Source of the DNA: Magallana gigas
Lineage: Eukaryota
Reading direction: 5' to 3'
DNA: 64,000 bases
Assembly: GCF_963853765.1 (NCBI RefSeq)
Contig: NC_088858.1
Location: forward strand, 19,654,001-19,718,000
The notes under the pieces were generated by a model. The model saw nothing but the letters and a program-made list of their open reading frames with translations. It did not search any database and was not told where the DNA came from. Of the stretch, positions 55,459 to 59,926 are shown one piece after another (the first letter of the stretch is position 1; the number at the start of each line of letters is the position of its first letter). The position numbers and the translations under genes are program-made.

Positions 55459-55517
<59 letters not shown>

Positions 55518-55595
55518 AGACTGACGGACGGACGGACGGGTCAGGTAAAAAACATTATATCCCTCGATCAAAACTTGTTGCAAGGGGTATAATAA
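54965..55595 (+). mobile_element. HINE/Helentron-type element with internal 171-bp tandem repeat and (AAAT)n
   Basis: Two near-identical units start at 55107 and 55278. They are followed by (AAAT)n at about 55459-55516, (GGAC)n, and a terminal atatccct...aggggtataat hairpin. Confidence 0.8.
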
Positions 55596-56043
55596 TTATA
55601 AGGGATACCTTGCTGAATTTACTATCCCTTGCTGAATTTACAGACCAAATTTACTAGCTGTTTGTAAGAAATAACACTTTTTAAAATAAATTTTAAAAAA
55701 TACGACTAAGTATACACTAAAAGTGAGACATAAAACATTTAAAGTATATTTCTTTTATACAGAAACATTAGCTGTACAGATCCATGATAACTTTGTAGTC
55801 ATATATACCACGAAAACCGATCACGTGATTAAACTTTCAGGGTTCCAATGGATGACAAAGATAAGAAATATATATGGCAATCCACTCAGATATTCAGAAT
55901 ATTATTTCATATTTCTAGAATTGGACAGATATAGAGCGAAAGACATTCTATTTTTCCCCCGTCCACTCCACCGTAGTTCTGACCCGATTTATAATGAGGG
56001 TAACGATCTGTCCGATTTCACACAAACTTGCAGTCCATCCACC

Positions 56044-58359
56044 ATGAAGGTATAGTATTTCAGCATATGGTCAAAGACTCCACCAATATTATTGTGTCTA
56101 GCTATGATATGATATTGTTTTACATTTGTTTCTAATTATAGTTTTAAAATTTATTTTTTTATTGTAAATTTGTAATTAGATTAAAGAATGATTTAACTCA
56201 TTAATCTTAATTTTTTTCAACGATCTACATAATTTTGTATTTTTATCAATGGAAATAAAACAATTTGTTGCATATATCAAGTCAGATGCAAGTTAGAACA
56301 ATAACATCTTATTTAATACTAAAGGTTCCGGTATGTAGTTATTTAAAAATTCTTTATACAATATTAAAATATGAATATAAAACTGAAATAAAAGTACTTG
56401 ATGCAACTTTTATTAAAACAATCTGGAAAAAAAATTCTGAGCAATCAGCCGAAGTATTTTAAAATTTTGGCGACACGTTCACTTTAGGGTACAGCGTTCG
56501 TTATCTGCGGACTTCTGCTGACTGAGGCCTTCGCGGTCAGCCTTTTAAACCAGACCCCGGTAAACACCCACCAGAGAACCCCCAGCTATTTCCGTCAGAT
56601 AACTAATGTCTCCCCCCAGGCAGTTAAGGTAGGCGTGGACCTCTGCCCAACATGCATCCAATTTACTGGTCAAGCCATTGACATGCTTCTGAACATCATT
56701 CTCCGTAAGTCAACAAAAATAGCAAATTTTGGAATACCAAACTTGCAGGATTTTTTCTTTCGGATTGATTCGGATTTTTTTTCGGATTGATACGTCCCTC
56801 ATTGTGACGATATCTACGATGACCGTTTTTATATTTATTGGGTACATACTACATAACGATGTCATCTACGATTACATTTGGTTACAGAATCCGGTGTTAT
56901 TGGTTCTTGTGGAGCTCTCTGCAGCGCTCTTGCCCAGAAAACCGGAAGTCAGGCTCTAGGTGCCGTCTGCAACATCTTGTGTGACGTTGTAGGGGTAGAA
57001 GAATTCATCAAACTTATCCAAAAGTAAGCACATATTTCTCGTTGTTAAATCCATCGGAAACATTTCCAACCAATACCATTTGTTTAACATCGTGTATAGC
57101 ACTTTTTCTGATCTGACTGCATTTTTTTTCTCTTTTTTTCACATTTTTTTAAAGAGCTGATCTTGACCCAATCTATTTTTGCGAGCTCCTGAAAACATGC
57201 CCTATTAAGGATGACGGAGATGCCAAAATCACATCATTTACTGTTAGCCCCCAATCTGGACCCCAGGGTAGAGTATTGTCATTCCTGTGGGTATTTTTAA
57301 GAAATAAGATATCAGTTTTGGATGTATATCGGGATATAAATACGGATTGGTCACGTGATCAAATCCTATAAAGCCCGAAGGATGTTCCAGACTAACCAAT
57401 CGAACACTTTCCTTGAATTCAAAATAAAGTTATTACCATAGAGGATAATTGATGCACATGCGTATTGTCATAATGAGTAAATGAATTTTTTTGTCATAAT
57501 CAGGAACTTTTAATTTGGATCTCGAATTCGATTCTAAAAATGGCACCGGTACGGGTGAACTCATTTTAGAGTGCGAAACTGTTGACCATCTTCCTGTCAG
57601 TAAGTGAAAATGATCACTGCATTAATTGTAAATATGAAATTTCATCCACTATTTCGAATTTAGGAATGGTTTTAAACGTGTTTCTAATTTTTGTATGGCA
57701 TTGCTTTCATTTAAATAGGCGGAGGGTTTATCACAGAAGCCCAGCCTGCAGGGCAATACTCCAAGCAGTTCAACCTTAAAGCTGAACCGGATCCGAACTG
57801 CGACCCCTCACAGGGGCCATGTGAACAGTGGCTGCCTGGAAATTACAATGTGAAAATATGTAAGAAAAATACATCATTTGTCCTAGACCTAAATTCGGTT
57901 TGTCATAGATAACGGACAGAAATGGTCATAAATATACTGTATGCAAGAATTTGGAAAGATTCGCGATATAAAGCTGATAACATTTGTAACCTTTGTATGG
58001 TATTACCGTGTTATATCTCTGTATATTGTATATATATCTTATCTGGTCAGATATATACTAACTCGGTCACGAAAGTCACTTAATTCTCAAGTAACAGAGC
58101 CAGACTTGTTTTCATCTTTATCATCAAAATTTTTATTTATTAATTAATCAGTATAAATTGAATTTATGCGTACGTTTACTGTTCATAAGTCCCGTACGCT
58201 GTTTTATAGATCTGCATATTGTTAAAATATATATACAAAAGTGAACATTTATTTTTATCATCTATTTCTTCAGATATCTGCAATGGTGAATGCGGAAGCA
58301 AGCATCCTCACAGTCAAATTTACGACACAGCCCAAACCAGCTTCACAATTACTCAGTAG
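56044..58359 (+). CDS. Countin-like secreted protein: saposin-like domain plus C-terminal beta-rich domain (about 264 aa)
   Basis: Exons 56044-56049 (ccaccATGAAG|gt), 56488-56704, 56888-57023, 57155-57267, 57504-57599, 57719-57859 and 58274-58359 splice in frame (795 nt). Signal peptide MKGTAFVICGLLLTEAFA, then DLCPTCIQFTGQAIDMLLNIILQSGVIGSCGALC..VCNILCDVVGVEEFIKLIQKADLDPIYFCELLKTC, which matches the countin saposin pattern. Confidence 0.88.
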
Positions 58360-58675
58360 ATAACAACTTCATCGGAACAGCTTCATCTTGTGTTGTGATC
58401 ATTTCAATTTATTTGAGTTTTACCTCCATTAAAGCATTTATGTTTTTTCGGAGGTTTTGTTTATTTATGGATGATGATTTTATAATGTTTCCGGGGGAGA
58501 GCATAAAACAGTACATCAATGACTAGAAAAAAATGCGAATCCTTCTCTCACACGCAGGGCTCTATAAAATCACCCCGCCTACAAAAAAATCATAATGAGA
58601 TAATAATTTTAATGAGACTTCTGATGTAAAATAAAATTAACTGTTAATACAGAATCAAACGTTTGTAAAAACTCA

Positions 58676-59926
58676 TTAAAAATCAAAATGCTTCGGTAAA
58701 ACTAAAGATTCTACGAGTCTGTTCGCAAGTCTTCTGAACCAAGAGCAATGCTTTAAAAGGAAAACGGACAACTTTAAATATAAAACACGGCAAGTGTCAA
58801 AAAAGCTTAGATCATGACGTCTTTTCTTGTTTGCCATATCTAACGAAAAACCAATGACAGATTCCGGTGTATAAACCCTACAAAAGGACAAAAGGCAAAG
58901 TCCATCTGTAAATGCCTTTGCCATGGAATGAAAGTGTTTCGGCGGGTTAAAAAGCGCGGGGTACACAATTTCGTTTTCGACTTGTTTGCAAATTCGATAT
59001 GCATCGTCTAGTCCGTGAATGCATATGTTATTATCATCGTCTATTCCTGAAAAGAAACCAACCCATCTCCAAAAGTAAACAAAGTCTTCCAAGTCAGATT
59101 TAGAGCCTTGAAGTCCAAGTTCTTCTGGGTACAATATTATAAATCCCACAAAACCCGCCTGTACTAGGCTCATGTCGTATTGCGTAAAATGTCGACCGTC
59201 AGTGTTAGCTTCCACCATACGGTCTCTAACACTTTTGTGCATGCTGTGAACCTTCCTAATGGATTTCCTGGCTAAAGACAACGGGTCCAAGATATCACCG
59301 TAATGCCAAAGAGCCACGTGACGCACTGTGTCTAAATATCGTTTTAGCGATTTCTTGGGTGTGTTCGATTTGTTGGTAAACACTAACGGTTCCAAGAGGT
59401 TTACCACGCTAAACCCTGAGACAAGTGAGCACAACATTGCTACAACGCAAATGGCTACATTATTTTGGAAGTATTTTCTTCCGTTGTTGAACTTGTCAAT
59501 GTCAATTTCGGAAGGGCTGTCTGTAAGAACAGGAAAAGGTCCTATGTCTTTGGAACTTCCGCTACGTAACTGCTTTAGACGGTCTTCAGGCATACTTGAG
59601 CCAGTCCTAAAAGAAAACAACAACAACAACAACTGAATAATATAAAAAAAATCAATATTTTTTTTTTAATAAAAAAGATCATCCACATTGCGGTCCGTCA
59701 ACCATAATTTTTCGTGAAGCTACATTTCTGCAGGTATATATGCGAGATAAAGAGTTATAGAGTCATATCTTAGTCATAACAACAACAGCGATAACAACGC
59801 AAGCATGTAATTACTGCATGGTAATAGTAAATCAACAAATGTTTGATTTGTTTTCTATCATTCTAAATTTAATGGAAAATATAAGGGACGGAATCTCACG
59901 GAGGGACATAAGGCATACCTTGTCAT
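58676..59926 (-). CDS. ER-bound oxygenase MpaB/rubber-oxygenase (DUF2236)-like heme protein (about 312 aa)
   Basis: Micro coding exon 59926-59919 (ATGACAAG|gt) plus 59606-58676. Family motifs LVFT.KS.TP....KRYL.T, IRKVHSMHKSV (putative heme His), TQYDMSLVQAGF and FVYFWRWVGFFSGIDD..NIC. Confidence 0.85.

What the first reader, a model, noticed from the sequence alone, without database searches (positions are those of the whole stretch)
56044..58359. Intact 7-exon countin-like saposin gene that the ORF track misses
Seen in sequence: all seven exons splice in frame and give a signal peptide, a short linker, a Cys-patterned saposin-like domain, and a second domain of about 110 aa with alternating beta-strand patterns ending ICNGECGSKHPHSQIY. 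Established: countin is the saposin-family component of the Dictyostelium counting factor that regulates group size. Inference: animal countin-like proteins are patchily distributed and functionally uncharacterised. This one could be a secreted lipid-binding or membrane-active factor (density sensing, humoral immunity, or lysosomal lipid handling), and its C-terminal domain may be ML/NPC2-like.
Basis: partly seen in the sequence, partly recalled or inferred. Interest (0 to 1): 0.7.

Follow-up and report, generated by a model that had tools for sequence, protein, structure and literature searches.

The report
Expressed oyster countin-like saposin gene
This is a real, strongly transcribed seven-exon oyster gene for a secreted two-domain protein (a saposin-like lipid-binding domain joined to an immunoglobulin-like beta sandwich); relatives in other oysters are already labelled "countin-1-like", so the gene is ordinary, though nobody knows what the protein does in animals.

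Summary
Seven exons at 56044-58359 (+) join through GT..AG introns into a 795-nt frame of 264 codons. Five junctions appear as GT..AG joints in RNA contigs from three studies and in raw stranded polyA reads. The first junction is seen once, as a contig end.

The protein is single-copy in this oyster genome. It is 84.6% identical, end to end, to the Crassostrea virginica protein named "countin-1-like". It keeps all 71 columns that are at least 90% conserved in the family.

A confident AlphaFold2 model of that orthologue shows a signal helix, a disordered linker, a five-helix domain and a seven-strand beta sandwich. A profile of the helical domain alone hits solved saposins and the saposin subunit of acyloxyacyl hydrolase (E 0.002-0.016, cysteines in register).

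The C-terminal domain is a generic Ig/FnIII-like sandwich, not specifically ML/NPC2-like.

The family occurs in many invertebrate phyla and protists, is uniformly acidic, and has no Pfam model, solved structure or tested animal function. The most likely role, by inference, is a lysosomal or secreted lipid-handling helper in digestive cells. Direct comparison with Dictyostelium countin was not possible.

Verdict: already known kind, modest interest.

The parts
56044..56049 (+). Exon 1: start codon plus one codon (ATG AAG), donor GT at 56050
   Evidence: An X1 RNA contig end reads ...CATCCACCATGA and is joined to exon 2.
56488..56704 (+). Exon 2: rest of the signal peptide (to about residue 18, AFA|VS), the poorly conserved linker (residues 19-49), and the first saposin helix with the C55-x2-C58 pair
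   Evidence: Joint 56704>56888 is seen in X2, X1, X7 and X20. The linker is disordered in the model and has the lowest conservation.
56888..57023 (+). Exon 3: saposin-like helices 2-3 with C82, C86, C102 and C106
   Evidence: Joint 57023>57155 is seen in X1, X7 and X20. The exon is single-copy in the genome.
57155..57267 (+). Exon 4: last saposin-like helices (ADLDPIYFCE motif, C129-x5-C135), the conserved D-x-G-D-A turn, and the first beta strand
   Evidence: The joint at 57266/57267>57503/57504 is seen in all four runs.
57504..57599 (+). Exon 5: beta strands 2-3 with the invariant N-G-T-G-T-G loop
   Evidence: Joint 57599>57719 is seen in all four runs.
57719..57859 (+). Exon 6: beta strands 4-6 and the C217-D-P...P-C224-E-x-W-x-P-G-x-Y loop
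   Evidence: This exon was the query that retrieved the family. Joint 57859>58274 is seen in all four runs.
58274..58359 (+). Exon 7: C239-N-G-E-C243-G-S-K-H-P-H-S loop, last beta strand, and TAG stop at 58357-58359
   Evidence: The motif is the most conserved part of the beta domain across diverse relatives.
56629..57215 (+). Saposin-like (SAPLIP) domain, residues 50-140, spread over exons 2-4, with eight invariant cysteines
   Evidence: AlphaFold2 models give five helices. The domain profile A2 hits AOAH and saposins C, D and A in the PDB at E 0.002-0.016. The best full-domain fold matches are NK-lysin (Z 5.5) and Na-SLP-1.
57216..58356 (+). Ig/FnIII-like seven-strand beta sandwich, residues 141-264, spread over exons 4-7
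   Evidence: AlphaFold2 pLDDT is above 90 here. VIA Z is 9-11.5 to many unrelated Ig-like domains. See also Foldseek and the weak filamin-repeat similarity at E 0.25.
58360..58450 (+). 3' UTR, end not fixed. ATTAAA lies at 58428. RNA contigs reach at least 58414 and in two runs continue into the convergent neighbour.
   Evidence: The extent is inferred.

Best explanation
Shown: 56044-58359 (+) is the intact, single-copy, strongly transcribed oyster orthologue of the eukaryotic family that databases call countin-like. It encodes a 264-residue acidic secretory-pathway protein with four parts: a signal peptide, a variable disordered linker, an eight-cysteine saposin-like (SAPLIP) helical domain, and an Ig/FnIII-like beta sandwich. 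The sandwich carries two very conserved loops, N-G-T-G-T-G and C-x-G-E-C-G-S-K-H-P-H-S.

Inferred: it acts in the lysosomal/phagosomal compartment or the secreted fluid of digestive-gland cells as a non-enzymatic lipid-handling helper. In this reading the SAPLIP domain lifts lipid or glycolipid out of the membranes of ingested algae and bacteria. The rigidly attached sandwich holds a head group or docks a partner hydrolase, much as saposins A-D and the saposin subunit of acyloxyacyl hydrolase do. The Dictyostelium counting role would then be a lineage-specific use of an older digestive protein.
For: Gene and transcript. Single copy.

Orthology: 84.6% identity over the full length to C. virginica countin-1-like and 78% to the Saccostrea protein. 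The oyster clade has 100% support in a tree that follows taxonomy. All 71 columns that are at least 90% conserved are kept. Variants in the RNA are five synonymous and one V-to-A.

Architecture: AlphaFold2 pLDDT 86 and pTM 0.75.

SAPLIP: the A2 profile hits the AOAH small subunit (E 0.0023) and saposin C (E 0.0039), with 10 of the 12 best hits being SAPLIPs and the cysteines aligned. The top fold matches are NK-lysin, Na-SLP-1 and saposins.

Saposin-like chemistry: median pI is 4.7 and none of 75 members is basic; the window's mature protein has pI 4.65.

Digestive context: a 'Countin-like protein' is among the 30 most expressed genes of the Mytilus digestive gland (PMC4203926). C. virginica countin-1-like rises together with meprin-like, plasminogen-like and Cvsi-2-like transcripts (PMC9498863). 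RNA depth here is roughly 5 to 300 times that over the neighbouring gene in three runs.

Strong constraint: 69% identity to amphioxus and 63% to a rotifer.
Against: The tissue of the RNA runs used here is unknown. The digestive-gland link comes from a mussel table and a larval data set, not from this species. No lipid binding, localisation or partner has been shown for any animal member. The fold match of the helical domain alone is weak (Z 5.5, Foldseek E 0.65 or worse). No Pfam SapB model matches. The invariant polar loops of the sandwich could mean catalysis or metal binding rather than docking. The only studied relative, Dictyostelium countin, acts as an extracellular signal and had only marginal liposome activity (PMC5890168).
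Confidence: 0.55

Rival explanations
1. It is a membrane-lytic defence effector. The SAPLIP domain would insert into and permeabilise microbial membranes, as amoebapores, NK-lysin, caenopores and hookworm Na-SLP-1 do. It would be released by haemocytes or gut cells, with the sandwich targeting microbial surface glycans.
For: The best full-length fold matches of the helical domain are NK-lysin (Z 5.5, 78 of 78 residues), Na-SLP-1 and caenopore-5. The sandwich resembles carbohydrate-binding modules such as the Wzt O-antigen binding domain (Z 10.9, 17% identity). Oyster metatranscriptome runs hold the transcript.
Against: The family is uniformly acidic, with median net charge -12 and none basic. 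Sequence conservation between phyla is 60-69%, which is unlike fast-evolving immune effectors. The gene is single-copy rather than expanded. Recombinant Dictyostelium countin showed only marginal pore-forming activity (PMC5890168).
Confidence: 0.2
2. It is a secreted signalling factor that reports cell or tissue density, acting through a surface receptor as Dictyostelium countin does within counting factor.
For: Sources name the orthologues after countin. The protein has a signal peptide. Strong conservation would suit a ligand with a conserved receptor.
Against: Transcript abundance is very high, which is unusual for a signal. No homologues of the other counting-factor subunits were examined. 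The family occurs in many unicellular, non-aggregating protist-like sequences. Homology to countin itself was not tested here.
Confidence: 0.1
3. The sandwich is a catalytic or metal-binding module. The disulfide-closed C-x-G-E-C loop followed by G-S-K-H-P-H-S, together with the N-G-T-G-T-G loop and the conserved acidic residues, would form an active site. The protein would then be a lipid-modifying enzyme with its own saposin-like substrate-presenting domain, like acyloxyacyl hydrolase.
For: These loops are the most conserved parts across animals and protist-like relatives. The closest profile hit of the helical domain is the AOAH saposin subunit, which serves an enzyme. pTM 0.75 suggests a fixed two-domain unit.
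Against: All structural neighbours of the sandwich are non-catalytic Ig-like modules. No enzyme family matched by Pfam or PDB profile.
Confidence: 0.12
4. It is not a functional gene: either a chance run of splice-compatible ORF pieces or a decaying pseudogene.
For: None beyond the tiny 6-nt first coding exon, which is supported by only one contig end.
Against: Exact joints in four RNA runs. Full-length alignment to orthologues. All conserved residues kept. Mostly synonymous variation.
Confidence: 0.01

Closest known systems
Animal 'countin-1-like' / 'countin-3-like' proteins (for example C. virginica A0A8B8DN14, and Saccostrea cucullata, Mizuhopecten, Branchiostoma, Lingula and Sycon entries)
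   Same: Same length, same two domains, same eight plus four cysteines, and the same conserved loops. Identity to the window protein is 84.6% (C. virginica), 78% (Saccostrea) and 69% (Branchiostoma). The window protein sits inside the oyster clade.
   Different: Nothing of substance; this is the orthologue in another oyster. The names are automatic and no function has been tested.
Dictyostelium discoideum countin (CtnA, UniProt Q86IV5) and CtnB/CtnC, subunits of counting factor
   Same: Secreted proteins with a saposin B-type domain (PMC11542183; PMC5890168). Databases named the animal proteins after them. An Atlas cluster dominated by Evosea is a near look-alike (score 0.94).
   Different: No Dictyostelium sequence could be fetched, so similarity over the beta domain, and its degree, are untested here. 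The group-size function belongs to an aggregating amoeba and has no obvious counterpart in an oyster.
Saposins A-D and the saposin-like small subunit of acyloxyacyl hydrolase (AOAH)
   Same: Profile hits at E 0.002-0.016 over the whole domain with the six canonical cysteines aligned. Acidic pI. A single SAPLIP domain serving a second module, as in AOAH.
   Different: There are two extra cysteines (a C-x3-C ... C-x3-C pair, eight in all). No Pfam SapB_1/SapB_2 match. The partner module is an Ig-like sandwich, not a GDSL lipase. It is not cut from a multi-domain prosaposin.
ML / NPC2 lipid-binding domain (PF02221)
   Same: Both are Ig-like beta sandwiches of about 120-130 residues in secreted or lysosomal proteins. 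Bovine NPC2 appears in the Foldseek list (rank 42, E 8e-5, TM 0.55 by target, rmsd 7.3).
   Different: Dozens of unrelated Ig-like domains match better (Z 9-11.5). No ML chain is in the VIA top 50, whose lowest Z is 8.2. There is no PF02221 hit in 75 full-length or 50 domain sequences. The weak profile similarity is to filamin repeats instead.

Membership tests
SAPLIP (saposin-like protein) superfamily | Cysteine frame C-x2-C ... C ... C ... C-x5-C forming three nested disulfides | tested here: met
   C55-x2-C58, C86, C102 and C129-x5-C135 are present, plus an extra pair C82/C106. All eight are invariant in 47 diverse domain sequences. They are in register with AOAH and saposin C in the HMMER alignments. 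Disulfide pairing itself is inferred.
SAPLIP (saposin-like protein) superfamily | About 80 residues folding into four to five amphipathic helices | tested here: met
   AlphaFold2 gives helices 57-79, 85-96, 99-112, 114-123 and 128-134 in the orthologue, with pLDDT above 90. The domain-only model has the same five helices at pLDDT 75.
SAPLIP (saposin-like protein) superfamily | Detectable sequence-profile similarity to established members | tested here: met
   A2 profile against PDB sequences: AOAH 5w78_A E 0.0023; saposin C 2z9a E 0.0039, 2qyp 0.0082, 2gtg 0.011, 1m12 0.016. Ten of the 12 best hits are SAPLIPs, each covering the whole domain. UniRef names many members 'Saposin B-type domain-containing protein'.
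SAPLIP (saposin-like protein) superfamily | Significant structural match to a solved saposin fold | tested here: inconclusive
   The best VIA hit is NK-lysin (Z 5.5, rmsd 3.4, 78 of 78 residues). Na-SLP-1 scores Z 4.6 and caenopore-5 Z 3.6, but TetR helices score alike. The Foldseek top 12 are nearly all SAPLIPs, yet E is 0.65 or worse.
SAPLIP (saposin-like protein) superfamily | Match to Pfam SapB_1/SapB_2 | tested here: not met
   No hit exon by exon or on full-length orthologues. Only 2 of 75 members touch PF20825 (Saposin-like domain), at E 0.085. These are model-sensitivity limits, not a defining biological feature.
SAPLIP (saposin-like protein) superfamily | Binding to or perturbation of lipid membranes | not testable with these tools
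   Needs recombinant protein and liposome or lipid-overlay assays.
Countin family (Dictyostelium CtnA/B/C and 'countin-like' proteins) | Full-length orthology to proteins that sources file as countin-like | tested here: met
   84.6% identity over residues 1-264 against 1-267 of C. virginica countin-1-like. Tree placement agrees. 71 of 71 conserved columns are kept.
Countin family (Dictyostelium CtnA/B/C and 'countin-like' proteins) | Significant similarity to Dictyostelium countin over both the saposin-like and the C-terminal region | not testable with these tools
   No Dictyostelium sequence could be retrieved. The two word-search lists stop at the best 120 hits, all closer relatives. A search from a divergent protist member found nothing. 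The 46-residue exon query could not reach that far. Indirect evidence: NCBI names, an Evosea-dominated Atlas look-alike cluster, and a Naegleria paper reporting similarity to countin-1 Q86IV5 (PMC6831594).
Countin family (Dictyostelium CtnA/B/C and 'countin-like' proteins) | Subunit of a secreted counting-factor complex that sets group size | not testable with these tools
   This is a functional property of the amoeba protein (PMC5890168). No animal data were found.
ML / NPC2 domain (PF02221) | Match to the ML family profile | tested here: not met
   No PF02221 hit at E up to 1 in 75 full-length members or 50 C-terminal domains. The A3 profile against the PDB gives only filamin repeats at E 0.25.
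ML / NPC2 domain (PF02221) | ML structures are the closest structural neighbours | tested here: not met
   NPC2 1nep is Foldseek rank 42 with rmsd 7.3. No ML chain is among the 50 best VIA matches (Z 8.2-11.5), which are AlkC Ig-like, GH2 Ig-like, RbmA, Wzt CBD, HAP2 domain III, transglutaminase barrels and RhoGDI.
Prosaposin | Tandem SapB domains flanked by SapA domains and processed to small saposins | tested here: not met
   There is one helical domain only, followed by a beta sandwich. The family alignment shows the same in 75 members.

The most novel reading that the evidence does not exclude
Countin-like proteins may be an ancient, eukaryote-wide helper of phagotrophic (intracellular) digestion rather than a 'counting' signal. 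A SAPLIP domain would be locked onto an Ig-like sandwich, and the invariant C-x-G-E-C-G-S-K-H-P-H-S and N-G-T-G-T-G loops would form a specific head-group, metal or catalytic site at the domain interface. On this reading the family is kept in microphagous animals (bivalves, gastropods, brachiopods, bryozoans, rotifers, amphioxus, sponges) and protists. It may even have been picked up by giant viruses (L086 and its low-GC, intronless relatives).
Probability: 0.2. Interest if true: 0.6.

Novelty: already known. Interest (0 to 1): 0.3.

Why it matters
For genome annotation it matters little: the gene is a plain orthologue of proteins already filed as countin-1-like in other oysters.

The family is worth a note for other reasons. 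It is one of the more conserved secreted proteins shared by oysters, amphioxus, rotifers and sponges (about 56-69% identity). It is very abundant in bivalve digestive tissue. It has no Pfam model and no solved structure. Its only studied relative is an amoeba group-size factor.

A lipid-binding and localisation study in an oyster or mussel would show whether the name 'countin' is misleading for animals. It would also show what the fused Ig-like domain adds to a saposin fold.

Tried and rejected
- Pfam on each exon found nothing, nothing on full-length orthologues, and nothing on all 75 members beyond two faint PF20825 hits.
- The PDB sequence search found nothing useful with exon 3 or with the full-length profile A1. 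Only the domain-only profile A2 worked.
- Own-genome searches with exons 2, 3, 4 and 6 found no paralogue. The one weak exon-6 hit, on C1, lies in a region whose ORFs look like a transposon DNA polymerase, and I rejected it as chance.
- A word search from the divergent protist member P0072, meant to reach amoebozoan countins, returned only the query itself.
- An Atlas search of the helical domain among Pfam-named clusters gave no usable hit.
- The Brock & Gomer 1999 paper is not held.
- One paper search was badly framed and gave nothing relevant.
- The upstream 5' UTR of the X1 contig has no match in the window at up to 3 mismatches. I read it as a divergent allele, because no AG precedes the shared part; a spliced leader or an extra upstream exon is therefore unlikely but not excluded.
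- The joined 264-residue model was never sent to any search or fold tool. Database work went exon by exon by reference, then through orthologue P0091 and locus references. The joined model was built only inside local scripts from the window file, for the frame check, local BLAST against fetched proteins, conservation mapping and the tree.
Full report
**Observation**

Reading 55700-58700 and assembling the seven proposed exons in a script gives these coordinates: 56044-56049, 56488-56704, 56888-57023, 57155-57267, 57504-57599, 57719-57859 and 58274-58359. Every intron starts GT and ends AG. The phases fit, and the 795-nt frame has a single stop at its end (264 residues, 14 cysteines). The bacterial-style ORF list sees only fragments, which is expected for a spliced gene.

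The window lies on contig 6 of a 564-Mb, 29-contig assembly. Runs labelled oyster metagenome hold the locus, and the nearest proteins are from Crassostrea and Saccostrea. The host is therefore an oyster.

**Transcription**

Nineteen runs from ten studies hold at least part of the stretch. The RNA-like runs hold 0.32-0.40 of its sampled words, which is roughly the exonic share.

I laid three contig sets (X2, X1, X7, from three studies) and one raw stranded polyA run (X20) on 55500-59000.
- Junctions 2-3, 3-4, 4-5, 5-6 and 6-7 all appear as exact GT..AG joints.
- The X20 reads have first mates on the minus strand, as expected for a plus-strand RNA in most stranded libraries.
- The 6-nt first coding exon is too short to be laid. 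One X1 contig carries ...CATCCACCATGA directly before exon 2, which is the window's exon 1.
- Upstream of that, the contig's 5' UTR differs from the window and has no match elsewhere in it. I take this for allelic divergence; it stays unexplained.
- Contig depth over the exons is in the hundreds to thousands, against 11-76 over the neighbouring gene. The tool warns that this is a rough measure.
- Six exonic variant sites are five synonymous changes and one V109A.

**Identity**

Pfam finds nothing exon by exon.

Exon 6, given by reference, was searched against 1.84 billion representative proteins. It gave 75 hits, mostly fragments, and a few full-length proteins of 235-289 residues with the same layout.

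A word search from one of these (P0019) and later from P0091 listed 261 and 172 relatives. Sources name them 'countin-1-like', 'countin-3-like', 'countin-1' or 'Saposin B-type domain-containing protein'. The named members come from many molluscs, Lingula, a bryozoan, an annelid, rotifers, Branchiostoma and the sponge Sycon.

A local BLAST of the script-built model against these fetched proteins gave the following:
- 84.6% identity over the whole length to C. virginica countin-1-like (P0091)
- 78% to Saccostrea cucullata
- 69% to Branchiostoma
- 63% to a rotifer

Further checks agree.
- In a 76-row tree the window protein sits with the two oyster proteins (support 100), and the tree broadly follows taxonomy.
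- All 71 alignment columns conserved at 90% or more are kept in the window protein.
- Exons 2, 3, 4 and 6 are single-copy in the genome.
- The window's own protein did not appear in the collection, so I cannot say whether this species' public annotation has it. Its orthologues clearly are annotated.

**Structure**

AlphaFold2 on P0091 with a 75-sequence alignment gave pLDDT 86 and pTM 0.75. The model has a signal helix, a disordered stretch (18-52), five helices (57-134) and a seven-strand sandwich (147-265).

Fold searches with the whole model matched only the sandwich. The matches are many unrelated Ig/FnIII-like domains:
- AlkC Ig-like, Z 11.5
- GH2 Ig-like domains
- RbmA
- Wzt carbohydrate-binding domain, Z 10.9, 17% identity
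- HAP2 domain III
- transglutaminase barrels
- RhoGDI, Z 8.2

NPC2 is only Foldseek rank 42, and no ML chain is in the VIA top 50.

Sub-ranges of these gave a 47-sequence alignment of the helical domain (A2; eight cysteines invariant) and a 50-sequence alignment of the beta domain (A3).
- The A2 profile hits the saposin-like subunit of acyloxyacyl hydrolase (E 0.0023) and saposins C, D and A over the whole domain with the cysteines in register. Ten of the 12 best hits are SAPLIPs.
- The domain-only model (pLDDT 75) has SAPLIPs as its best full-length matches: NK-lysin Z 5.5, Na-SLP-1, saposins A-D, AOAH, SP-B and caenopore-5. The scores are not significant on their own.
- A3 shows that C-x-G-E-C-G-S-K-H-P-H-S is the family's most conserved motif. 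The second cysteine pair (C-D-P...P-C-E-x-W) is absent in most protist-like members.
- The A3 profile finds only filamin repeats at E 0.25 and no ML or other Pfam family.

**Distribution**

Only one of 185,579 prokaryotic species genomes has a match, on a MAG contig where the gene is interrupted as if by introns. This is a eukaryotic contaminant. The family is therefore eukaryotic.

One IMG/VR giant-virus MAG contig carries an intronless copy. It is 50-56% identical to copies on long, low-GC freshwater contigs.

**Function**

Nothing here tests function. Several clues point to a saposin-type lipid-handling helper in digestive cells, lysosomal or secreted, rather than a cationic pore-former or a rare signal:
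- a signal peptide (heuristic only)
- uniform acidity (median pI 4.7, none of 75 basic)
- very strong cross-phylum conservation
- a single copy in this genome
- high transcript level
- a 'Countin-like protein' among the 30 most expressed Mytilus digestive-gland genes (PMC4203926)
- co-regulation with digestive-type transcripts in C. virginica larvae (PMC9498863)

Dictyostelium countin, the only studied relative, is a secreted subunit of counting factor with marginal liposome activity (PMC5890168; PMC11542183). I could not fetch its sequence, so the link rests on source names, an Evosea-rich look-alike cluster and a Naegleria report (PMC6831594).

The invariant polar loops of the sandwich leave room for a binding or even catalytic site.

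**Verdict**

The central reading (an intact countin-like saposin gene) stands, and the ML/NPC2 suggestion does not. The gene belongs to an already annotated family. Interest is modest and lies in the family's unknown animal function.

Noticed in passing
L086:4647-5372 (IMG/VR contig GVMAG-M-3300023179-123_000001); also L028, L034, L039, L031, L020/L021, L030: A giant-virus MAG contig (8.8 kb, 27% GC, six tightly packed ORFs including a ubiquitin-UBA protein and an OTU protease) encodes an intronless 241-residue countin-like protein. It is 50-56% identical to intronless copies on long, low-GC freshwater metagenome contigs of up to 82 kb. Whether these are viruses or a low-GC protist is not settled, because only 300-nt flanks of the metagenome contigs are held.
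   Followed up: partly
window 58676-59632 (-): A convergent neighbour: a 318-residue single-exon ORF with an MpaB/Lcp oxygenase-like domain (PF09995, E 2.3e-6). RNA contigs in X2 and X7 run from the countin-like exon 7 or 3' UTR into it, so the two 3' ends are close or overlap.
   Followed up: partly
window 57298-57380 (intron 4): RNA contigs and reads cover this short stretch with unmatched ends on both sides and on both strands. This looks like a dispersed repeat transcribed elsewhere, not part of this mRNA.
   Followed up: no
window 56020-56047 against the X1 contig end: The 5' UTR of one RNA contig matches the window only for the 12 bases up to ATGA. Further upstream it differs and has no match in the 64-kb window. 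It is probably a divergent allele; an unseen leader exon is not excluded.
   Followed up: partly
P0068 and L087:2291-3283: A protein filed as 'saposin domain-containing protein, partial [Escherichia coli]' groups with the apple snail Pomacea in the tree. The only prokaryote-genome hit is a Thermodesulfobacteriota MAG contig with an intron-like interrupted copy. Both look like eukaryotic contamination of bacterial assemblies.
   Followed up: partly
P0020 (756 aa): A predicted protein joins an ionotropic-glutamate-receptor-like N-terminal part to two partial countin-like repeats. It is probably a fused gene model over tandem countin-like genes in some other genome.
   Followed up: no
L003 (G000:C1:58457074-58460211): The only other exon-6 hit in the genome (E 0.5, with a stop inside) lies among ORFs that resemble a transposon-type DNA polymerase. 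I treated it as a chance match.
   Followed up: partly
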